Shown: in pieces, positions 1-53,597 of the stretch
Position numbering within the stretch: position 1 is the first letter of the stretch
How the letters are laid out: each line of letters starts with the position of its first letter
Assembly: GCF_006345805.1 (NCBI RefSeq)
Contig: NC_043016.1
Coordinates: forward strand, 19,406,001 to 19,470,000
Direction of reading: 5' to 3'
Origin: Octopus sinensis
Taxonomy: Eukaryota
DNA: 64,000 bases
Made by a program: the position numbers and the translations under genes
The notes under the pieces: generated by a model
Databases searched by the model: none
What the model was told of the DNA's origin: nothing
Seen by the model: the letters and a program-made list of their open reading frames with translations, nothing else

Positions 1-477
1 TCAGACATACTTCTTTTTTTTTTTTTTTTGAGGAAAAAAATTGCTTCTAAATAAATGACCAATAATTTGGGAATAAATAAATTTGACACTGATTGCACTG
101 TGATTTTGTAATCGTTATATTATAGTGTAAGGCTACATTTTATACTCTTTGTGTCCAGTAACGGGCAACACATTGCTATGCAGTATTCTTTATCATTAGA
201 GAGACAAAAAACTATGACAAATAACTTGTTGAGGCTGGAAATATTAATTTTAGGAAATAGGTCAGCATGACATAGTTTTCTAAACTTTTTTTGTAGATAA
301 GATACGTTTTTACATTCAGTTTGATTCTCTTCATCACACATACACACACGCACACACAAAGGTGTGTTTGTATTTATGCGTATGCATTTTATGTACATAT
401 ATACTCGATTGCTTCTATGTAGGTTTTATGTTTCTACATTTTTCCTGAAGTGTGCTCTGTTATTCTATTCTACTTTT

Positions 478-1809: not shown

Positions 1810-2520
1810 GGAGATGGTCTAGTTAAGGAACTAGAAGAAGCCTGGAGGACTGGTAATGCGGACTAAGCGAGGGTGAAAAGACTGGAGTTAAACCAGCATC
1901 TTGAAGCCCAACACATCGGAAGTATTGCCAAAGCTAAGTTAGGTGCGATGGGAAGTGAAGGAATCAAAGTTGCTGGATGGGCCCGAGTGGTGGAAGCTCG
2001 GCAAGGAAATAGTTCCACTATTCGGTCTTTGACGAATCAAAATGGTGTCTTGGTAAACGAATCCGAGAAAATGTGAGACCTTTCGGGAGTACTTCGTCCA
2101 GCTGTTCGGGGGTAACGGCGGTCCTACTAGTGGGAGAGCTCTCGAGGATTTTCTTGCCGGGCTGCCGTATCTCTCGGGGTCGGATGTGGAGTCTTGCGAA
2201 GGGTCAGTCACGCCTGTGGAGGTGATGAGGCTCTCGCTGACTGTAAAGCAGGTAAGTCGTCGGGACTTGACGGTCTTCCGTACGAGTTGTGTAAATGTAT
2301 GCCAGACTTGTTCGGACATCTATTGGCTGACGTGTACGCGAAGTGGCAACAGAATGGGTTTATCCCCAAATCTGTGCGCCGGGGAGTAGTGACGTTGATC
2401 AGAAAGGACCCAGACAAGGGGACGCTATAGAGAATATCTGGCCCATCACTTTGTTAAACGCAGAAGTGAAGATTTTGACCAAGGTCTTAGCAAAAAGGTT
2501 GGCGCGTGTCGCGAATGGTA
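1810..2520 (+). pseudogene. L1/Tx1-clade LINE ORF2 fragment (start of RT)
   Basis: Frameshifted GKSSGLDGLPYEL...GFIPKSVRRGVVTLIRKDPDKG...WPITLLNAEVKILTKVLAKRL. Confidence 0.85.
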
Positions 2521-2761: not shown

Positions 2762-3330
2762 TCACGTCCACTGTGGAGTGTTCGGGTGCTCCAACCTATA
2801 TGGATCTGCTAGGTGAAAGTGACTGCGCAGATCCCGTAAGCTTGGGTTACATTTTCTGTTCACGTTCGAGCCATCACAATCTGTGTGTGCGCCACATTTT
2901 GTGTTAAAGTCTCCTAACAATACTAGCGAATGCGACGTGGCCAAGAACTTGTCCAGGTCACGAAAATATTCACTTTGCGGGCCCATAATGTTGGGTGCAT
3001 AAATAGCGACTAGCCTGATTATCTTGCCACAACTGAATGTCAGGTCAAGAACGACCAACCTGCCTTCTGGGTCAGAAAAACCAACTTTTTCTCGACGACC
3101 CGGTTTCTTTTTAGTAGGGCCAACACCCCACCCCACTTCCCGCCCGACTCGGAGAAACGTATTTCTCATAGTCGTTCAGGAGGGGGAGCAGATATCTTGG
3201 CCCCTTTACCCGGGTTTCCGTTGCAACAATCACATCCAATTTTCTTGACCTGTTGTCATTTAGGAAGCGTCCTTGCTTCCAGCTAGACATCAGGCCACAA
3301 ACATTTATACAACCAATGTGAACAATATGA
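2762..3330 (-). pseudogene. L1/Tx1 AP-endonuclease fragment
   Basis: IGCINVCGL...DVIVATET...SDPEGRLVVLD...VAIYAPN...LLGDFN...DPYRLEHP...WT, with one frameshift. Confidence 0.88.
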
Positions 3331-4092: not shown

Positions 4093-4545
4093 CGCTAAGA
4101 ATTTCGCCCGGTGTGCTAACGTTTCTTATTTCTTTACTGCCCACAAGAGCTACACACAGAGGGGACAAACAAGGACAGACAAACGGATTGAGTCGATTAT
4201 ATCGACCCCAGTGCGTAACTGGTACTTATTTAATCGACCCCGAAAGGATGAAAGGCAAAGTCGACCTCGGCGGAATTTGAACTCAGAATGTAGCGGCAGA
4301 CGAAATACCTATTTCTTTACTACCCACAAGGGGCTAAACACAGAGAAGACAAACAAGGACAGACATAGGTATTAAGTCGATTACATCGACCCCAGTGCGT
4401 AACTGGTACTTATTTAATCGACCCCGAAAGGATGAAAGGCAAAGTCGACCTCGGCGGAATTTGAACTCAGAATGTAGCGGCAGACGAAATACCGCTAAGC
4501 ATTTCGCCAGCGTGCTAACGTTTCTGCCAGCTCGCCGCCTCACCT
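4093..4545 (-). mobile_element. SINE family B, tandem/nested pair
   Basis: GGCGGCGAGCTGGCAGAAACGTTAGCACG...GAGTTCAAATTCCGCCGAGGTCGACTTTGCCTTTCATCCTTTCGGGG. Other copies at ~9060-9298, 30610, 31372-31605, 35540, 44055-44275, 55375-55580, 56262-56480 and 58600. Confidence 0.88.
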
Positions 4546-5577
4546 CCGCAACAATATTAAGGAGACCGCATAGAAAATACATGTTACATTCACTTAATTT
4601 ACAAATAAATCATTGTTTTATAATATCTAACTGCTAAGTTTATTTAAACTGGTTTAATTCCTGTTTTTATAGTATATTTTATAAACAAAACGTACTTTTA
4701 AAATTTTATAGACTTCCACAATATTCTGTAGTCTCTATCGCTTTGTACCGTTGGTCGTTATTTACGTACAAATTCAACTTTACCGATCTTGCTTTATATT
4801 CGGTGGTTATATATACAAATAGAAATCTAATTTTTGTTTTTTCTCAACTATTTGTTATCCAAGTAAACATGAAAGGAAATCATTGGAAACTTCGGTTTCC
4901 TTTTCATTGTTATATTGTATTTCTTGTAATTGGACCCCTTCAAACTATTATAACATCTGTTAAGTCCTCTCAGAAATGGTTGAAGGTAATTTATCACCAC
5001 AATGTAAATTTTTTTTTCCTTGTACGTCATCAAAACACGTCATTAGCAAAATTGACGGGAAAATAGGTTAGAATGACCTATTATTTCAGAACTCTGTGAA
5101 ATATCATAAAGTGAGCAGAAAGTTTTAGAATAATATTATTTGGCCAAGCTTAGAATCGTTGATAGAAGAAACAGTGTGGGAAACAGCAATAATTATAACA
5201 GTAATGCTGATGAGCTAGTTGAAGATGGGGGTCTTTTTTTTATGGTTCCGGGTTCAGTCCCACTGCGTGGCACCTTGGGCAAGCCTTCTGAGTGGATTTG
5301 GTAGACGGAAAGTAAAAGAAGCCTGTCGTATGTATATATATATATAGTGAATCTTACATGCATGAAGTGGATCCGATCCACCATAGCCAAATTTAAATTA
5401 ACACCGCTACAGAACTTTTCCCACGATGGAACAATGGTTTTTCTCTGACAGCAGTTTTACATTTTCCAGATGCCTTTAGCTAGGCCGAAATACTGTCTTC
5501 ACCACTTGACCCTTTCTAACCTCTTCTACTTCACCAAAAGCTAGAATAGAGATAGCAAGATCACCAACTAAATCTAT

Positions 5578-6718: not shown

Positions 6719-6952
6719 CACACATTCCGCGATGCACATATTCCGCGAAGTACCCATTCCGCGAAGCACACATTCCGCGATGTACATACAGTGATGCACA
6801 CATTCCACCATGCACACATTCCACCATGCACACATTCCACCATGCACACATTCCGTGAAGCACACTTTCCGCGATGCACACATTCCACGAAGCACACATT
6901 CCGCGATGCACACATTCCACGAAGCACACATTCCGCGATGCACACATTCTGC
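6719..6952 (+). repeat. 16-bp minisatellite (GCACACATTCC[G/A]CGA[T/A])n
   Basis: About 14-15 degenerate copies downstream of the PBS. Confidence 0.85.
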
Positions 6953-7469
6953 GACAACTCGTTTCACTAAAACAGCTAAATTCATACGCATATCTTTTTG
7001 AATGTTCTTTATATTATTCATATTTAGCATGTACTTTTTTTTCGTCCACTTTGAAAATGTTTGTATTGTTTACACACACGCATGCACCTTTCCTTACAGC
7101 CTGGCCTTGCACACGCATCTGCACACATTGTTCATACACATACATGTTGACACTGTCACATTCATGCACCACACATGCCTATCTCGCTTGTTTTCCTGCT
7201 CCCTGCACCCTTATAGACACAGCTCATCTCTGTAAGAACTCTGAGGGGCCCGCACTCTACATGTTAATTCTTTGATATCGCTGCTAAGAGTCCCGGTAAA
7301 CAGTACTGACCGAGGGCACTTAATACTCTCAGTCCGCCCCTGATCCAGAGTATTCCTCTACTCATGCAACTGGACAACTATCTTTATCGAGTTTTCTTTC
7401 ACCAAGAAGTAGTTTGTTCAGTCACTCAGCCTTAAATGCTTTTGGTTAGATTGAGTGGGTATGTGTTGG

Positions 7470-18450: not shown

Positions 18451-20023
18451 CAGTGGGGGGAAATAAATATACATACATGTCAAAATTCTTTATTTATTTA
18501 ATTTCTAATGAACATAAATGGGATATACCAATACATATTTGCATACAGATGCATAAACTAAGAATATGCAAAGAAACTAATAAATTATAGTAACTAAGGA
18601 ATTTATATACAATCATAAATATTTGGGGTGAAAAAAATATTATTACAGAATAAATTTAAGATTTTCTATGCCACAAAATACTGTTAAAATAATTTTTTTT
18701 ACTAGAACTTTCTCGTTTGTTCCAATAATCTTATCAGTTGTTATTTTTAAGTGTCAAAACGCTAGCTTCTTCATTCAGCACTGAGACAACATAAAGTAGT
18801 ATCGTAATAATGGCGAAAAGTAAAGAACTCACAAATACAGTGAAAAACTTAATTATTGAACAGTGGAAAGCAGATAAAAGTTACAGGAAAATATCAGAGA
18901 CCCTTTGTATTCCATTTTCTACCATATCTTCATTTATTCAATGATATAAAAAATCGGGAACTGTTGAAAACAGAATAAGATCCAGTACACCACGCAAGAT
19001 TTCCCCTAGATCTTTAAGAAAAATGAAGTGAAGAATCGAAAAAAATGCAATGATCACCAGAAAGGAGTTGCAAGAAGATTTGTTAGCTTCAGGGACTAGT
19101 GTTACACTATGGAACAATCAGCAATGAACTTCATAGGAATGAACTGAAGTCACGCTCTCCTAGAAAAACTCCGCTCTTGACTAAAAGGCATAGAGATGCC
19201 CGTTTAAAATTTGTTTATGAACATGAAGATAAACCTGATACATTCTGGGAAAATGTTCTATGGACAGACGAATCGAAAATTGAATTGTTTGGAAGAAATT
19301 CGCGTAGCCATGTTTGGAGGAAATATGGTACTGCCTATCCGCCGAAAAACACAATTCCTACCATAAAGTTTGGGGGCGTTTCTCTGCAAATGGTACTGAC
19401 AATTTACATGCGATAGATGGTAGAATGAATGCAGAGATGTTCCAAAATATTTTCAACAATAATTTATGGAACTCTGTAGTAAGCTCCAGCTTTGTGAAGG
19501 GTGGATTTTACAACAGGATAACGACCCTAAGCACACGGCGAAGTCTACAAAAAAATGGATTATCGATCACAATATAAAATTATTAGAATGGCCAAGCCAA
19601 TCACCTGACTTGAACTGCATTGAAAATTTGTGGCGTTCTTGAAAATTAAACTTCATTCAAGAGCCCCAACGTGCATTGCAGATTTGAAGAAAATTTGTCA
19701 AGAAGAATGGAAAAATTCCTAAAGAAAACATCGAGTCATTAAGAACTACAAGAAGAGATGGTTGAAGTGGAACTGAATAATGGTTATGCTACGGAGTATT
19801 AAATCAGATTTATCAGTTATTTATGTCTGTACGAATACTTTTTTTCATCCCTAAATATTTATAATTGTATATAAATTCCTTAGTAACTATAATTATTAGT
19901 TTCTTTTGCATATTCTTAGTTTATGCATCTGTATGCAAATATAGTATTGGTATATCCCATTTATGTTCATTAGAAATTAGATAAATAATTTTGACATGTA
20001 CGAATATCTATTTCCCCCCACTG
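18451..20023 (+). mobile_element. Full-length defective Tc1 (DD34E) transposon with ~190-bp TIRs
   Basis: TA|CAGTGGGGG ... CCCCCACTG|TA. Transposase relic 18810-19802: MAKSKEL...VLWTDESKIELFG...DNDPKH...[15 protein letters not shown], with stops and frameshifts. Confidence 0.93.
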
Positions 20024-20648: not shown

Positions 20649-20797
20649 GGTAAAGAATACGTACACTACCGGATTTCGGCGTAACAAAACCTCTAACCAT
20701 AACCCTAAATCCTAACCCTAAACCTAACCCTAAACCCTAACCCTAACACTAACCCCTAACTCTAACCCCTAATCACCGGGTGTAGGTATTCTTTACC
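20649..20797. mobile_element. ~150-bp MITE-like element filled with degenerate telomeric repeat
   Basis: GGTAAAGAATACGTACAC ... GTGTAGGTATTCTTTACC inverted termini; (CCCTAA)-like array at 20695-20772; no TSD seen. Confidence 0.65.
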
Positions 20798-21004: not shown

Positions 21005-21890
21005 GTGCGCGCGCGCGCGTGTGCGTGTGTACACTCACGCATGCGAAAACTGGAACTGAAAAGCCATTTTCCCATAGTTTTTCTAATGTCTCTGTGATTC
21101 ACAAATACTTTTGAGTATATTTTTGTCCTCGCCACAAAAGAAAGCGAACATCTTGTAAGGTGTAATAAGATAATTTTAAATTTACTACTAAGGGAAACGG
21201 TAATAACTTTCGAACCATTTCATTTGTACGAGACAACATTGAATACTCGTTTGATGTTCTGAAGTCGATGGCAATTTGACTAGAAAACCACAATTTGTTA
21301 ATACATTTACGCGCGCAAAAACTTATAGTTATACGAGTCAGTAATTGATATGTTCAGTACATTACCGATCAAATTGATGATAAACGGATGATTGAATACC
21401 GTTTGAGATATATCCTTTTAATACCATTTTACTATTCATAATAATTAATATTATTTTACTTATTCACTTAATATCCTAAAGTTACTGTTAATTTATAACA
21501 AGAGAAAAAAAAAAGGAAAGCTTTCTCTTCATACGCATTTACCTCACAGCAATTTGTATAATCACAACGAGTCAATAGTTTACATATACAATTATTACCG
21601 ATAAAATTGACTATAAACAGGTAATCAAATAACATTTTTCAAAAATGAAGTCGAATTCTATGAAATTTGAAATATATTCTTTTAATATATTTTTCGTCTA
21701 TACATAAAGACTGTGCTGTTTCTGATGATAAGCACGTAATCTCATAGGAACAAAAGTTATTAGATAACGCACAATGACCGGATCAAAATATTTTAAAACT
21801 ATTATGTTTGGTATCAAACATAAAGTATATTATAATTAGAATGAAGGACTTTCCCCATTTTTGCTCTAATAAATCCGAAAGTTGAAGTTA

Positions 21891-22109
21891 TCATCGGCGT
21901 CTTGGTTTAGCTTTAGATCTTCGAAATAAAGATGAAAACCAAGACCATGCTCTTGACAATCTCCCGGTCTTTTTGACGCCTCTCCTTGATATACCTTTTC
22001 CTCCTCGTGTTCTCAAATGTCTTCTCCGCCTAGATCTCCTCCTTCTGCCTGCCGCCACATTCTGCCGCCTGTTGCTTCTTCTCATTGGAACCCGTTCATA
22101 AAGAGTCAT
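21891..22109 (-). CDS. Small Arg-rich (protamine/transition-protein-like) ORF, 72 aa
   Basis: MTLYERVPMRRSNRRQNVAAGRRRRSRRRRHLRTRGGKGISRRGVKKTGRLSRAWSWFSSLFRRSKAKPRRR; 24 Arg + 5 Lys; lies in non-repetitive sequence; ATTAAA downstream at 21681-21686 (minus). Confidence 0.55.
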   Translation of the reverse strand: MTLYERVPMRRSNRRQNVAAGRRRRSRRRRHLRTRGGKGISRRGVKKTGRLSRAWSWFSSLFRRSKAKPRRR

Positions 22110-22180
22110 TTTCCTCTTAATAAGAAAATATTTACCGACATCCAATCTCCAAAGGATTCGATAAACGGTTGAAAATCCAA

Positions 22181-22226
22181 GAATATATTAAATGACGTCC
22201 TTAAATGACGTCCTAAAATGACGTCA
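22181..22226 (-). promoter_or_regulatory. Three tandem CRE-like motifs plus an AT-rich TATA-like box
   Basis: TGACGTC at 22193 and 22206, full palindromic TGACGTCA at 22219 (13-nt spacing); TAATATATTC (minus) at 22181-22190, upstream of the Arg-rich ORF. Confidence 0.5.
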
Positions 22227-22819
22227 TTCAGATGGACGACAACTGTCTTCTTATATACGTTAATGGTTGTTAAAAATCAAGAATTGAGAATTAGATTGTT
22301 GCTGCTTGAATTACCAATGGTTCTTATCCAGTCGCCATCGCTGTTTTATAACACTGGGCAAAATATTTACCTCTTAATTAGGTCGATCTATTCAACTAGA
22401 TTTCTTCAGAAAAAGTTTACCGATGTAAGCTACAACGGCAATAATGAATGCCTATTTCTTTTCCATTCTCGTTTTTTTTTTTTTTACTTCAGCTTTTTGC
22501 TTTCATACATACGCGCGCTTGCGCGTGCACACGCTCACACTCCCTTTATATCTTTTAATTACTTGATAATGTGGAAACTGTAATGAATTTTCCTAGACTG
22601 TAAAACAAATTAGATACGAACTGAAGAATATTTTCTTTTAATGCACGTTTTCTGATTTTATTTACTGATGAATGTACTGTAGTATTTTGAAGTCTATTAG
22701 TTGATGAAGCATCTGAGAAGGGTTAGATCTTTTATCGGAAATTCGGGGCTTTTTTTTTTTTTTTTTTTTCGAATTAGAGAATATACCGGAAAGTGCTCAG
22801 AAGCTACTTAATAAATACG

Positions 22820-23030
22820 CAGTTGCTGCAAGTCACGCTTCGCGCTGTTAGCTGTTGAGCTTTACACGTCGGAACATCAGCTGCCGATGCTTCGCATTGA
22901 GCCGTCAGCTGTTTGAGAGCCGTACGTTGAACCATTAGCAGTTTGGGAGCTGAGCAATGAGGCGTCAGCAGTTTGGGAGTCACGCTTTGAGCCGTCAACG
23001 GTTCAGGAGCCGCGTGTTGAATCAGCAGAT
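22820..23030. repeat. Degenerate 30-bp GC-rich minisatellite
   Basis: Unit like GTCAGCAGTTTGGGAGTCACGCTTTGAGCC, about 7 copies. Confidence 0.7.
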
Positions 23031-24506: not shown

Positions 24507-25097
24507 CACTTCATAAGGCAGAAGCATCCAGAGATTTTTAGGATATAAAATTTGTGGAACGTTAGGCCTTCGAACGAACAAACAGCAACTGAGTGGACGT
24601 ACAGAGTAAACAATCGACGGAGACAAACATTAAGGACCGTTAGGCCAAGACGCATTGTAATGGGTGACGCCTGAGATAAATTTTTGAAGGATATAGTATA
24701 AATAGAAAAGAAGAAAATAGTAGAAGAGAAAAAAATGTCAGGAGGCGAAAAAAATGACGTCCAGCTAGATAGACGTCGCATTAAAAAAAAAAACAGGTAA
24801 GAGAAATGGCCCGTATTCACATGTGAGCAAACAGGCAGAGGGGAAGGTGGATAAGAGAGTGGATGAGGGGAAGAGAGAAGGAACGAAAGATAGTAGAGAG
24901 TTGAAGAAAGACAGGGGAGAGCAAAGGAGTAGGGAGAACGGAAAATAAAGTGGATTATAGAGGGATAGAGAGAAAAAATGAAAACTAAGTTTAGAGTCTA
25001 AGCAATTATGAATAATTGTAAGAACTTACAAGGCTGTGTGGCGTTTTACACACACACACACACATATACATATATACATACATACATACATGCATAC

Positions 25098-30044: not shown

Positions 30045-30145
30045 CTAGGATTAGGGATAATGTTTAATGAAAGGGTTAGGGTTTAGTGTTAAGGTTAGGG
30101 TATAGAGTTAGGGTTAGGGCTTAGGCTTAGGGGTTAAGTTAATGT
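30045..30145 (+). repeat. Degenerate interstitial (TTAGGG)n
   Basis: AGGGTTAGGGTTTAGTGTTAAGGTTAGGG...GTTAGGGTTAGGGCTTAGG. Confidence 0.7.
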
Positions 30146-32089: not shown

Positions 32090-33240
32090 CTTCATCATCA
32101 TTGTTTAACATCCGCTTTCCATACTGGCATAAGCTGGATGGTTTGATTGAGGACTGGTAAACTAGAAGGCTGCACCAGGCTCCAGTCTGATCTGGCAGTG
32201 TTTCTACAGCTGAATGCCCTTCCTAATGCCAACCACTCCAAGAGTGTAGTGGGTACTTTTTAATGTCACTGGCACAAGGGCTAGTCAGGCGGTACTAGCA
32301 TCGACCATGTTTCCTATGTCCAACTTTTCTCTCAGAGTGCTTACATTCTATTGTGTATGCACACTGACATTTCACACCCATTGGAGAACACTAGCTTCAT
32401 TTCTTGCAAGCTTAAACATGTCCGCGGCCCATGTTTCACAGCCGTGTAACATAGCTGTTTGCACATATGTGTCATACCGTCTCCCTTTCACTCTGAGTGC
32501 GAGATCCTTTGTTACCAGCAGAGGTAGGAGCTCTCTGAACTTTGCCTAGGCTATTCTTATTCTAGCAACTACACTCTCAGAGCATCTGCCTCAGTCACTG
32601 ACTTGGTCACCTAGGTAACAGAAGCTATCAACCACTTCCAAATTTTCCTCCTGACATGTGACTGAAGCTGTTTTCTACACATTTTCAGTGTTTATTGCCC
32701 CTGTGCATTTGCCACACATAAAAACTAACTTCCCAGTTAGTCTTCCTTTGATATTGCTGCATCTCTTATGTGTCCATAGCTTACACATCTTATGAATTTT
32801 CTACCTATGCCTTTTCTACAGATCGATCAGGGCCATCTATCTGAAGGGATTTGTGATTCGTCTGCCTTCCTACTTACTAAGACTGGTTTTTGTAGATTGA
32901 CTCTAAGGCTCTTCGATTCTATACCTTGCTTCCACACCTGAAACTTCTCCTCTAGTTCTGATATTTGACCAGTTATTAGAGCAAGGTCATCAGCATAGAG
33001 GAGTTCCCGGAGCATCCTGTCTTGAATTCCTTTGTTATTGCTTGGAGGACTATGATGAATAAGAGGGGTCTGAGGACTGAAGCTTGGTGGACCCCTACCC
33101 AGAATTCTTCACTATACTCATTGCCAACCCTCACCTTACTGACAGCATCCCTGTACATGACTTGTACAACTCTCACTAACCACTCATCTATCCTTAGTTT
33201 CCACATTGACCACCAGATTTAAAACACTAAATCATTTCAA
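32090..33240 (-). mobile_element. RTE-type LINE 3' fragment
   Basis: VGVHQASVLRPLLFIIVLQAI...ELLYADDLALI...; 3' UTR ends in (GAT)n. Confidence 0.88.
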
Positions 33241-51850: not shown

Positions 51851-52089
51851 GTGTCATCGGCCACATCAACAATATTGGTTTGTTTACACTTGCCTCAATA
51901 GGTCTTCGCAAACAAAGTTCATTGTCCAATGAATATATACATGTATGTATGTATACTATATATGGCTAATGTCGATGCATTCCATCGTAACTGCCTCACT
52001 GGTTATAGGGGAGGTGGCAAAGAAATCCACCGGTTTGTTCAATTATCTGTGTTCCAACAGGGTGGTAAAGACACTGTATATATATATAT

Positions 52090-53597
52090 ATGATGACCTT
52101 GCTCTAATTGCTGAGTCACTAGCAGAACTAGAGGAGAAGTTTCAAGTGTGGAAACAAGGATTAGAATCGAAGGGCCTTAGAGTCAACCTAGCTAAAACCA
52201 AAGTCCTAATAAGTAGGAAGGCAGGCAAACCACAAATCCCTTCAGGTAGATGGCCCTGCTCGATCTGTAGGAAAGGTGTTGGTAGAAACTCTATTAGATG
52301 TACCCAGTGTAAACTATGGACACATAAGAGGTGCAGCAATATCAAAGGAAATCTAACTGGGAAGATAGTTTTTGTATGTGGCAGATGTTCAGGAGCAATA
52401 AACACTGAAAATGTGCAGAGAACAACTTCTGCCACATTCCAGGGAGAAAAACTAGAAGTAGTTGATAGCTTCCGTTACCTAGGTAACCAAGTCAGTAGTG
52501 GGGGAGGGTGCACTGAAAGTGTAGCTGCTAGAATAAGAATAGCCTGGGCAAAGTTCAGAGAGCTCTTACCTCTGCTGGTGACAAAGGGCCTCTCACTTAG
52601 AGTAAAAGGTAGACTGTATGATGTATGTGTACGAACAGCCATGCTACACGGCAGTGAAACATGGGCCATGACAGATGAGGATATGCATAAGCTCGCAAGG
52701 AATGAAGCCAGTATGCTCCGATGGATGTGTAATGTCAGTGTGCATAATCAACAGAGTGTTAGTACCTTGAGAGAAAAGTTGGTCCTAAGAATTATCAGAT
52801 GTGTGCAAGAGAGCCGACTGCGCTGGTATGGCCATGTAGTGAGAATGGATGAGGATAGCTGTGTGAAAAGTGCCACACCATAGTGGTTGAGGGAACCTGT
52901 GGAAGAGGTAGATTCAGGAAGACCTGGGATGAGGTGGTGAAGCATGACCTTCAAACATTTGACCTCACCAAGGCAATGACTAGTGACTGGTACCTTTGGA
53001 AATATGCTGTACTTGAGAAGACCCGGCAAGCTCAAGTGAGACCATAACTTTGTGGCCTATGCCAGGGGTGTAACCAGCCCACTTATGCGTACCTTTCCTT
53101 CATTGGACACTAAACTCTGCTTGCGAAGACCTGTTGAGGCAAGTGAAATCAAAATCAAATTCAATGACTGGCATCCATGCTAGTGGAGTGTTAAGAGTAC
53201 CATACGAGCGTGATCATTGCCAGTGCAACAAGCTGGCCTCCGTGCCTGTGGCACGTTAAAAACACCATTCGAGCGTGATCGTTATCTGCGTCGCCTTACT
53301 GGCACTTGTGCAGGTGGCATGTGAAAAAAACATTCAAGCAAGGTTGTTGCCAGTGCATAAAAAGCACCATTTGAGCGTGGCTGTTGCCAGCACCACCTGA
53401 CAGGCCTTCGTGCCAGTGGCATGTAAAAGCACCCACTACACTCTCGGAGTGGTTGGTGTTAGGAAGGACATCTAGCCGTAGAAACTCTACCAGATCAGAT
53501 TGGAGCCTGGTGCAGCCATCTGGTTCACCAGACCTCAGTCAAACCATCCAACCCATGCCAGCATGGAATGCAAACGTTAAACGATGATGATGATGAT
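52090..53597 (+). mobile_element. RTE-type LINE 3' portion (open RT C-terminus plus 3' UTR)
   Basis: DDLALIAES...GLRVNLAKTK...CSICRKGVG...CTQC..W.HKRC...CGRC...VDSFRYLG...RIAWAKFREL...RLRWYGHVVR; tail (GAT)n; 5' end truncated at (TA)n. Confidence 0.93.

What the first reader, a model, noticed from the sequence alone, without database searches (positions are those of the whole stretch)
21891..22226. Intronless Arg-rich micro-gene behind a triple CRE promoter: protamine/transition-protein-like candidate
Seen: a 72-aa ORF with 24 Arg and 5 Lys, including RRRRSRRRR, in unique sequence. An AT-rich TATA-like box lies ~75 nt upstream and three TGACGTC(A) motifs with 13-nt spacing lie just beyond it; ATTAAA is ~200 nt downstream. 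Established: vertebrate protamine and transition-protein promoters use CRE sites, and cephalopod sperm use short Arg-rich protamines and precursors. Unusual: a Trp/Phe amphipathic segment (LSRAWSWFSSLFRR) is not typical of protamines and would also fit a membrane-active cationic peptide. I do not recognise the protein, so the function is inference.
Basis: partly seen in the sequence, partly recalled or inferred. Interest (0 to 1): 0.75.

Follow-up and report, generated by a model that had tools for sequence, protein, structure and literature searches.

The report
Arginine-rich orphan ORF behind triple CRE
In an octopus genome window, a 72-codon reading frame rich in arginine sits just downstream of three tandem cAMP-response elements; it looks like a small gene for a DNA/RNA-binding peptide, but it has no known relatives, does not meet the composition of a true protamine, and whether it is expressed could not be tested here.

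Summary

ORF length, the TATA-like string and ATTAAA are all expected by chance in this AT-rich DNA. Two things are not:
- **Arginine content.** It exceeds every dinucleotide shuffle and is specific to this reading frame in all three thirds of the ORF.
- **CRE array position.** The window's only CRE array lies 84-117 nt upstream of that ORF's ATG.

No relative was found in about 15 billion proteins, which include annotated Octopus vulgaris and O. bimaculoides sets, nor in Pfam, PDB, or viral and metagenome contigs. A 72-aa query only detects close relatives.

The peptide fails protamine criteria: 33% Arg against 60-80%, no cysteine, no family match. It has no signal peptide.

Best reading (about 0.4): an octopod-restricted, CRE-driven small gene for a basic nuclear nucleic-acid-binding peptide. 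A sperm role is one option (about 0.12). Rivals are a non-genic coincidence, a relic of a mobile element or pseudogene, or part of a larger transcript. Copy number, orthologues and RNA evidence could not be tested with these tools.

The parts
22188..22226 (-). Tandem array of three 13-nt units (TTAAATGACGTCC x2, TAAAATGACGTCA). Each unit carries a CRE core TGACGTC, and the unit farthest from the ORF is the full palindrome TGACGTCA. Putative CREB/ATF binding sites.
   Evidence: It is the only such array in the window. The cores lie 84-117 nt upstream of the ATG.
22183..22190 (-). Weak TATA-like string TAATATAT, directly abutting the last CRE and 74-81 nt upstream of the ATG. If used, the transcription start would fall near 22160.
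   Evidence: Such strings are common in this AT-rich DNA, so this is weak evidence.
22250..22257 (-). The best TATA consensus in the region, TATATAAG. It lies upstream of the CRE array. If used, transcription would start near 22228 and the CREs would lie in the 5' leader.
   Evidence: Which TATA is used, if any, is unknown.
22106..22141 (-). Upstream 11-codon ORF (MSVNIFLLRGK*) in another frame. Its stop overlaps the main ATG as ATGA. The upstream ATG has poor context (T at -3) and the main ATG has A at -3.
   Evidence: Read directly. It would be included in the leader if the start site is at or upstream of about 22141.
21891..22109 (-). 72-aa ORF including its stop: MTLYERVPMRRSNRRQNVAAGRRRRSRRRRHLRTRGGKGISRRGVKKTGRLSRAWSWFSSLFRRSKAKPRRR. 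It has 33% Arg, a predicted amphipathic helix at residues 51-64 and three RRS motifs.
   Evidence: AlphaFold2 single-sequence model: pLDDT 58, helices at 12-35 and 42-62.
21888..21890 (-). Second in-frame stop codon (TAA), immediately after TGA.
   Evidence: direct reading.
21681..21686 (-). ATTAAA, a possible polyadenylation signal 205 nt after the stop. It implies an mRNA of about 500 nt if the start site is near 22160.
   Evidence: Expected by chance with P about 0.44 per 300 nt. It lies inside a locally duplicated segment.

Best explanation
This is a lineage-restricted (octopod) small gene. Inferred mechanism: bZIP factors of the CREB/ATF family bind the three CREs spaced 13 bp apart. These abut a weak TATA-like element, and together they drive a short minus-strand transcript of roughly 500 nt, from about 22160 to just past ATTAAA at 21686. 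Scanning ribosomes mostly skip a poorly placed upstream ATG and translate a 72-residue, +28-charged, cysteine-free peptide. With no signal peptide, an RRRRSRRRR-type arginine motif and a C-terminal amphipathic helix, the peptide would go to the nucleus or nucleolus and bind or condense nucleic acid. Its RRS motifs would be kinase targets.

Shown here: the sequence elements, their spacing, and that the arginine enrichment is reading-frame-specific and beyond chance. Inferred: transcription, the start site, translation, localisation and function. The tissue (spermatid, neuron or other) is open.
For: - Arg fraction is 0.33 against a shuffle mean of 0.14; 0 of 5000 shuffles reach it.
- 0 of 450 locally shuffled windows yield a comparable ORF.
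- Arg is enriched only in this frame in each third of the ORF, including the C-terminal third, which is not purine-rich.
- Five of the six Arg codons are used, and there is a period-3 signal.
- The ATG has A at -3, and the stops are in tandem, TGA TAA.
- The only triple-CRE array in 64 kb lies 84-117 nt upstream of the ATG. My estimate for a random placement 30-300 nt upstream of one given ATG is about 0.004.
- CpG observed/expected is 1.19 in the unit against 0.61 for the window.
- The unit is single-copy in the window, and no transposon or viral protein domains appear in six-frame Pfam scans of 21050-22750.
- The amphipathic helix segment has a significant hydrophobic moment.
Against: - No homologue was found anywhere: 5.8 billion clusters; exhaustive phmmer, 1.84 billion representatives; Pfam, PDB; metagenome and viral tblastn.
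- The ORF is absent from the protein collection in any form, although annotated O. vulgaris and O. bimaculoides proteins are in it.
- ORF length, the TATA-like string and ATTAAA carry no weight.
- The best TATA consensus lies on the wrong side of the CREs.
- An upstream ATG precedes the main ATG.
- The two perfect 13-nt copies could be a recent slippage event, and about 15 short tandem duplications of period 13-30 occur in the window.
- The core of the ORF is 78% purine and could be a decayed AGR triplet tract.
Confidence: 0.4

Rival explanations
1. Non-genic coincidence. A CpG-richer, purine-rich patch, possibly a decayed AGR-type triplet tract, happens to be open for 72 codons. It lies next to a short slippage duplication of a 13-mer that happens to contain TGACGTC. 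Nothing is transcribed or translated as a unit. At most the CRE array acts as a stray binding site.
For: - Open frames of this length are common: 60 ATG-ORFs of at least 72 aa.
- The opposite strand is also open across the region.
- About 15 short tandem duplications occur per 64 kb.
- Two of the three units are identical, suggesting recent origin.
- About 8-10% of 340-nt windows reach the same CpG count or observed/expected ratio, which would favour both CGN Arg codons and ACGT-containing motifs.
- There are no homologues, and the ORF is not in the collection that holds annotated Octopus proteins.
- The TATA-like string and ATTAAA are uninformative.
Against: - The frame-specific Arg excess persists in the C-terminal third, where purine content is only 0.58 (P=0.005).
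- No locally shuffled window reproduces it.
- Tandem Repeats Finder finds no triplet array in the ORF, even at score 30.
- The adjacency of two independently rare features has P of about 0.004 by my estimate, or perhaps a few percent if CpG-rich patches cluster.
Confidence: 0.28
2. Relic of something mobile or duplicated. Candidates are a solo LTR or other transposon regulatory region with multimerised enhancer repeats, an endogenous viral fragment, or a pseudogene fragment of an arginine-rich coding sequence. The ORF's coding-like statistics would then be inherited, not maintained.
For: - Multimerised enhancer repeats followed by a TATA box and then a poly(A) signal within a few hundred nt is the layout of retroelement LTRs (my knowledge).
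- Small Arg-rich DNA-packaging proteins are typical of several DNA viruses, e.g. baculovirus P6.9, described as protamine-like in PMC12159748.
- The window is dense in transposons: a Tc1 relic at 18.8-19.9 kb, LINE copies and SINEs.
- Coding-like periodicity without any cellular homologue fits a fast-evolving foreign origin.
Against: - There is no second copy in 64 kb plus 21 kb of octopus DNA.
- No terminal repeats or target-site duplication were recognised. The only candidate is a 17-nt AT-only inverted repeat at 21678/22179, with E about 1.2.
- No viral or transposon protein domain lies within 21050-22750.
- No viral contig holds a relative or a period-13 triple CRE.
Confidence: 0.17
3. One reading: a sperm nuclear basic protein (protamine, protamine precursor or transition-protein analogue) expressed in spermatids. 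This is a special case of the best explanation.
For: - Size 8.8 kDa, pI about 12 and arginine clusters separated by Ser and neutral residues match the general protamine description (PMC12216123, PMC11607694).
- A non-basic 8-residue N-terminus could be a cleaved leader, since N-terminal processing is common in protamine precursors (PMC12216123).
- RRS motifs resemble protamine phosphorylation sites.
- CRE-plus-TATA promoters drive Prm1-3 and Tnp1-2 in mouse (PMC3285179).
- The predicted mRNA of about 500 nt is protamine-like in size.
Against: - Arg is 33% (50% at best over 28 residues) against 60-80% in protamines and 79% in squid (PMC3073880).
- It has zero Cys, whereas the octopod Eledone protamine is Cys-rich (cited in PMC11607694 and PMC12216123).
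- The Trp/Phe amphipathic helix is atypical.
- There is no Pfam protamine or transition-protein hit, and transition proteins are a mammalian family.
- CRE is not testis-specific outside vertebrates (my knowledge).
Confidence: 0.12
4. The ORF is not a stand-alone gene. Either it is the last coding exon, or part of an exon, of a larger spliced transcript, or the CRE array is a promoter or enhancer for a different (possibly plus-strand or distant) transcript and the ORF is incidental.
For: - The frame is open for 12 codons upstream of the ATG and is preceded by a pyrimidine tract ending in AAG.
- A donor-like AAG|GTATAT lies at codons 38/39.
- The CRE is palindromic, and TATATA at 22251-22257 can be read on either strand, with a plus-strand ATG at about 22317.
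Against: - Both splice-like sites are weak: AAG acceptor, and no G at +5 of the donor.
- The plus-strand ORF runs into simple repeats.
- No recognisable coding exon or domain lies within 21050-22750.
Confidence: 0.08

Closest known systems
Cephalopod protamines (squid Sp1/Sp2; the Eledone cysteine-rich protamine)
   Same: Small, extremely basic, with arginine clusters interrupted by Ser and neutral residues, and a possible N-terminal leader. The host is a cephalopod.
   Different: 33% Arg instead of about 80%. No Cys, unlike the octopod protamine. It contains Trp/Phe and an amphipathic helix. No sequence similarity is detectable, and expression in sperm is unknown.
Mammalian CREM-dependent spermatid genes (Prm1-3, Tnp1, Tnp2)
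   Same: A CRE immediately upstream of a TATA-type element, in front of a very short ORF for a basic protein. These genes are bound by CREM and collapse in Crem knockout mice (PMC3285179).
   Different: Here there are three tandem CREs, not one. The mammalian genes contain an intron (my knowledge). CREM is a vertebrate paralogue. There is no similarity to the TP1/TP2 or protamine P1/P2 Pfam families.
Arginine-rich-motif peptides and viral protamine-like packaging proteins (e.g. baculovirus P6.9)
   Same: A short chain with Arg runs and Ser phospho-acceptors, and expected nucleic-acid binding and nuclear or nucleolar targeting.
   Different: No viral gene context, no viral relative, and host-type flanks of microsatellites and SINEs.
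Multimerised CRE enhancers (natural tandem CREs and the 3-4x CRE cassettes of reporter plasmids; my knowledge)
   Same: Closely packed repeats of TGACGTCA placed directly before a minimal TATA element.
   Different: It is embedded in octopus genomic DNA. Two of the three sites are 7/8 matches (TGACGTCC). Function is untested.

Membership tests
Protamine (sensu stricto) | Arginine 60-80% of residues (PMC3073880; up to 80% in squid, PMC11607694) | tested here: not met
   24 of 72 residues = 33%. The best 28-residue stretch (9-36) is 50%.
Protamine (sensu stricto) | Small size (3-10 kDa) and pI of at least 12, with arginine clusters (PMC11607694, PMC12216123) | tested here: met
   8.8 kDa, computed pI about 12.0, net charge +27.6, RRRRSRRRR plus six RR/RRR groups.
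Protamine (sensu stricto) | Sequence relationship to a known protamine family | tested here: not met
   No Pfam family at E<=10. No protein at E<=1 or E<=0.001 in two very large searches. No PDB chain. Caveat: these searches are weak for short, low-complexity, fast-evolving proteins.
Octopod protamine (Eledone type) | Cysteine-rich, forming inter-protamine disulphides (Gimenez-Bonafe 2002, as cited in PMC11607694 and PMC12216123) | tested here: not met
   0 Cys in 72 residues.
Sperm nuclear basic proteins in general | Spermatid-specific expression and presence in sperm chromatin | not testable with these tools
   No octopus RNA-seq, cDNA or proteome is reachable. The peptide string is absent from searchable papers.
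Transition proteins TP1/TP2 | Match to the TP1 or TP2 families (mammalian) | tested here: not met
   No Pfam hit at E<=10.
Protamine-like (H1-derived) proteins | Histone H1-type winged-helix core or an H1-like Lys/Arg-rich tail | tested here: not met
   No linker-histone or any other Pfam domain. Lys is only 7%.
CRE-containing promoter | Palindromic TGACGTCA (or the TGACGTC core) near a core promoter | tested here: met
   One full 8-mer and two 7/8 sites at 22193-22226, with TATA-like strings on both sides.
CRE-containing promoter | CREB/ATF binding, cAMP inducibility, and a transcription start site within about 100 bp | not testable with these tools
   No start-site or binding data are available.
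Secreted cationic antimicrobial or membrane-active peptide | N-terminal signal peptide or prepro-region | tested here: not met
   The highest 9-residue Kyte-Doolittle mean in the first 30 residues is 0.02, so there is no hydrophobic core. The amphipathic cationic helix itself is present (hydrophobic moment 0.72).
Protein-coding gene (generic) | Reading-frame-specific composition beyond base composition | tested here: met
Protein-coding gene (generic) | Conservation of the ORF in related genomes, or an annotated orthologue | tested here: inconclusive
   No relative was found in a collection that holds annotated O. vulgaris and O. bimaculoides proteins. Unannotated genomic DNA of octopods could not be searched. 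The attempt to reach the orthologous locus failed.
Dispersed repeat / transposon | Multiple copies; terminal repeats and target-site duplication | tested here: inconclusive
   Single copy in 64 kb plus 21 kb, and no convincing termini. Genome-wide copy number was not testable.

The most novel reading that the evidence does not exclude
An octopod-specific, cAMP/CREB-inducible micro-gene encoding a cysteine-free arginine-rich peptide with an amphipathic Trp/Phe helix. It would be either a second, previously unseen class of cephalopod spermatid chromatin protein (a functional analogue of transition proteins, acting before the Cys-rich protamine) or an activity-induced nuclear micropeptide in neurons. 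In either case it would be a de novo or very fast-evolving gene with a textbook-compact promoter.
Probability: 0.12. Interest if true: 0.6.

Novelty: new member of a known kind. Interest (0 to 1): 0.33.

Why it matters
If the gene is real and testis-expressed, it would add a sequence-defined, non-protamine basic protein to octopod spermiogenesis. There, only biochemical descriptions of a Cys-rich protamine are widely cited. It would also be an invertebrate example of CRE-driven expression of a chromatin-condensing peptide, which bears on whether the CRE-protamine link predates vertebrate CREM.

If it is expressed elsewhere, it is a compact natural triple-CRE promoter that could serve as a cAMP/activity reporter in cephalopods.

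If it is not expressed, it is a useful cautionary case: a strongly coding-like orphan ORF next to a consensus motif array in repeat-rich DNA.

Tried and rejected
Searches with the ORF that found nothing:
1. Word-indexed search of 5.8 billion protein clusters.
2. Exhaustive phmmer over 1.84 billion representatives.
3. Pfam at E<=10 and PDB sequences.
4. tblastn-confirmed scans of JGI metagenome contigs and IMG/VR viral contigs.
5. Exact look-ups of the 72-aa ATG form and the 84-aa TTG form.
6. A literature search for the peptide strings.

Attempts to reach an orthologous octopus locus:
1. The LINE ORF at 51945-52883 identified the window as octopod. The O. vulgaris locus it led to (L001, OX597814.1 48.56 Mb) shares only transposon copies with the window.
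2. My last protein search used a concatenation of neighbouring ORFs, including the Tc1 relic. It was saturated by fish Tc1 transposases at about 41% identity and gave no octopus handle.

Hypotheses checked and set aside:
- tRNA, SINE or other known RNA at the site: no tRNA and no Rfam match in the window.
- Endogenous virus or transposon protein context: six-frame Pfam scan of 21050-22750 was empty, and no period-13 triple CRE occurs in viral contigs.
- MITE or LTR boundaries: only AT-rich, chance-level inverted repeats.
- Retrogene: there is no downstream A-tail on the coding strand. The A/T runs at 21505-21514 and 22470-22485 are in the wrong orientation or position.
- Hidden roughly 260-nt satellite spanning the ORF: only the 3' flank (21304-21441 versus 21536-21707) is duplicated.
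- A paralogous unit at the fourth AAATGACGTCC (24752-24762): none.

The AlphaFold2 single-sequence model was too low in confidence (pLDDT 58) to justify a fold search. The squid protamine gene paper (J Mol Evol 2004) is not held.

Full report
**What is there.** The window is AT-rich (36.6% G+C) eukaryotic DNA, full of microsatellites, SINE-like repeats and decayed transposons. A LINE reverse-transcriptase/PHD ORF at 51945-52883 matches proteins of Octopus vulgaris and O. bimaculoides at 85-86% identity, so the source is an octopod.

The finding lies on the minus strand. The ORF runs from ATG 22109 to TGA 21891 and is followed at once by an in-frame TAA. It encodes 72 residues: MTLYERVPMRRSNRRQNVAAGRRRRSRRRRHLRTRGGKGISRRGVKKTGRLSRAWSWFSSLFRRSKAKPRRR. 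It has 24 Arg, 5 Lys, one acidic residue and no Cys, a mass of 8.8 kDa and a net charge of about +28.

Upstream, at 22188-22226, Tandem Repeats Finder reports 2.9 copies of a 13-nt unit (TTAAATGACGTCC, TTAAATGACGTCC, TAAAATGACGTCA). This gives three TGACGTC cores, the outermost being the full CRE palindrome TGACGTCA. TAATATAT (22190-22183) abuts the innermost CRE, 74-81 nt before the ATG. ATTAAA lies 205 nt after the stop.

**Which parts exceed chance.** Several do not.
- The window holds 60 ATG-ORFs of at least 72 aa and 177 open frames of at least 72 codons.
- AATAAA/ATTAAA occur about 1.9 times per kb per strand, so one within 300 nt has P=0.44.
- TATA-like strings are frequent. The best consensus, TATATAAG at 22257-22250, actually lies upstream of the CREs.

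Two things do exceed chance.
- The arginine content (0.33) is above all 5000 dinucleotide-preserving shuffles of the ORF (mean 0.14, max 0.28).
- None of 450 windows shuffled in 220-, 500- or 2000-nt blocks produced an ATG-ORF of at least 60 aa with 30% Arg or more.
- The next most Arg-rich ORF in the real window has 18%.
- The enrichment is confined to this frame in the N-terminal, core and C-terminal parts. Arg counts by frame are 3/0/0, 14/2/3 and 9/1/3, with P=0.04, 5e-5 and 0.005. This includes the C-terminal third, which is not purine-rich.
- Five of the six Arg codons are used, and lag-3 and lag-6 autocorrelation is raised.
- TGACGTC occurs 7 times in the window against 2.75 expected, three of them in this array.
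- By my estimate, a randomly placed array would fall 30-300 nt upstream of this one ATG with probability about 0.004. That would rise to perhaps a few percent if CpG-rich patches cluster. The unit's CpG observed/expected ratio is 1.19 against 0.61 for the window, a level reached by about 10% of windows.

Short tandem duplications are also common here, with about 15 of period 13-30 in the window.

**Context.** The segment 21700-22300 has no other copy in the window or in a 20.9-kb O. vulgaris locus.
- No tRNA or Rfam family is present.
- Six-frame Pfam scans of 21050-22750 are empty.
- The nearest recognisable element is a frameshifted Tc1/mariner relic at about 18.8-19.9 kb.
- I found no convincing terminal repeats, target-site duplications or an A-tail in the right place.
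- The 3' flank contains a decayed local duplication (21304-21441 versus 21536-21707), which also explains the two ATTAAA sites.

Two features complicate the simple gene model. An 11-codon upstream ORF has its stop overlapping the main ATG (ATGA), although its own ATG has poor context and the main ATG has A at -3. A donor-like AAG|GTATAT sits at codons 38/39.

**Relatives.** None was found.
- The word-indexed search found nothing at E<=1.
- The exhaustive phmmer search of 1.84 billion representatives found nothing at E<=0.001.
- Pfam, PDB, metagenome contigs and viral contigs were all negative.
- Neither the ATG nor the TTG form of the ORF is on record, even though the collection holds annotated O. 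vulgaris and O. bimaculoides proteins.

So the ORF is not an annotated protein in those sets. The test is weak beyond close relatives. By my estimate, a 72-residue, compositionally biased query needs roughly 54 bits to reach E=0.001 in a library of that size. Annotation pipelines also often skip such short ORFs.

I could not search unannotated octopus DNA or RNA. The O. vulgaris locus I reached shares only transposon copies with the window. A last search with concatenated neighbouring ORFs was swamped by fish Tc1 transposases.

**Comparison with what is known.** Protamines are described as 60-80% Arg. Squid Sp2 has 58 residues and 79% Arg (PMC3073880). Protamines weigh 3-10 kDa, have pI of at least 12, carry Arg clusters and are often made as N-terminally processed precursors. 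The octopod Eledone protamine is cysteine-rich (PMC11607694, PMC12216123).

The ORF meets the size, charge and cluster criteria. It fails on Arg content (33%, or 50% at best over residues 9-36), on cysteine (none) and on any family match. It should not be filed as a protamine or a transition protein.

The mouse precedent is real: Prm1-3 and Tnp1-2 are CREM-bound and collapse in Crem knockouts (PMC3285179). CREM is a vertebrate paralogue, however, and CREB-type factors also act in neurons (my knowledge), so the CREs do not indicate a tissue.

LSRAWSWFSSLFRR has a hydrophobic moment of 0.72, reached by 0.9% of shuffles. There is no signal-peptide-like N-terminus, which argues against a classically secreted antimicrobial peptide. 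AlphaFold2 without an alignment gives two helices at low confidence (pLDDT 58), so I did no fold search.

**Verdict.** The most likely single reading (about 0.4) is a lineage-restricted small gene. CREB/ATF factors on the triple CRE would drive a transcript of about 0.5 kb, and its product would be a cysteine-free, highly basic, probably nuclear or nucleolar nucleic-acid-binding peptide. A sperm-chromatin role is a sub-case (about 0.12).

The rivals are:
- a non-genic coincidence of a purine/CpG-rich open frame with a slippage-duplicated 13-mer (about 0.28);
- a relic of a mobile element, virus or pseudogene that still looks coding (about 0.17);
- part of a larger or different transcript (about 0.08).

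Only the sequence anatomy and its statistics are shown. Transcription, translation, localisation and function are inferred. Three analyses would decide between these readings but could not be run here: BLAST of 21.6-22.3 kb against complete octopod genomes, mapping of octopus RNA-seq or long-read data, and mass spectrometry of acid-soluble sperm nuclear proteins. Interest is moderate to low until one of these is done.

Noticed in passing
window 20688-20772 and 30072-30132: Two short interstitial telomere-type arrays in opposite orientation, (AACCCT)n and (AGGGTT)n, lie about 9.3 kb apart and bracket the segment that holds the finding. They may belong to a repeat family with telomeric-repeat ends or mark an old rearrangement.
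   Followed up: no
window ~18800-19900 (+): A decayed Tc1/mariner transposase, split over three frames by frameshifts and stops. Its best database matches are fish Tc1 transposases at about 41% identity.
   Followed up: partly
window 51945-52883 (+) and 32307-33218 (-): A LINE fragment encoding the end of a reverse transcriptase plus a PHD finger, with an inverted partial copy about 19.5 kb away. It is 85-86% identical to O. vulgaris and O. bimaculoides proteins, which identifies the window as octopod.
   Followed up: partly
window 6719-6954: A 16-nt tandem array, CACACATTCCGCGATG x 14.9, with a CpG pair in every unit, inside otherwise CpG-poor DNA.
   Followed up: no
window 21304-21441 vs 21536-21707: A decayed local duplication of about 140 nt (70-79% identity, offset 232-264 nt) in the 3' flank of the ORF. 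Both copies carry an ATTAAA, so the 'poly(A) signal' is part of a duplicated segment.
   Followed up: yes
window 22893-22997: A 30-nt tandem repeat (about 3.5 copies, 66% matches), 670 nt upstream of the CRE array. It is open on the minus strand for 64 codons.
   Followed up: no
window 24752-24762: A fourth copy of the 11-mer AAATGACGTCC found in the CRE units, 2.5 kb away. It has no similar ORF or repeat next to it and is consistent with chance.
   Followed up: yes
window 1981-2400 and 4181-4560: The most CpG-dense patches of the window (24-26 CpG per 340 nt, observed/expected 1.0-1.4, G+C up to 55%). They lie next to an endonuclease-like LINE ORF at 2762-3169 and a 184-nt tandem duplication at 4127-4493.
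   Followed up: no
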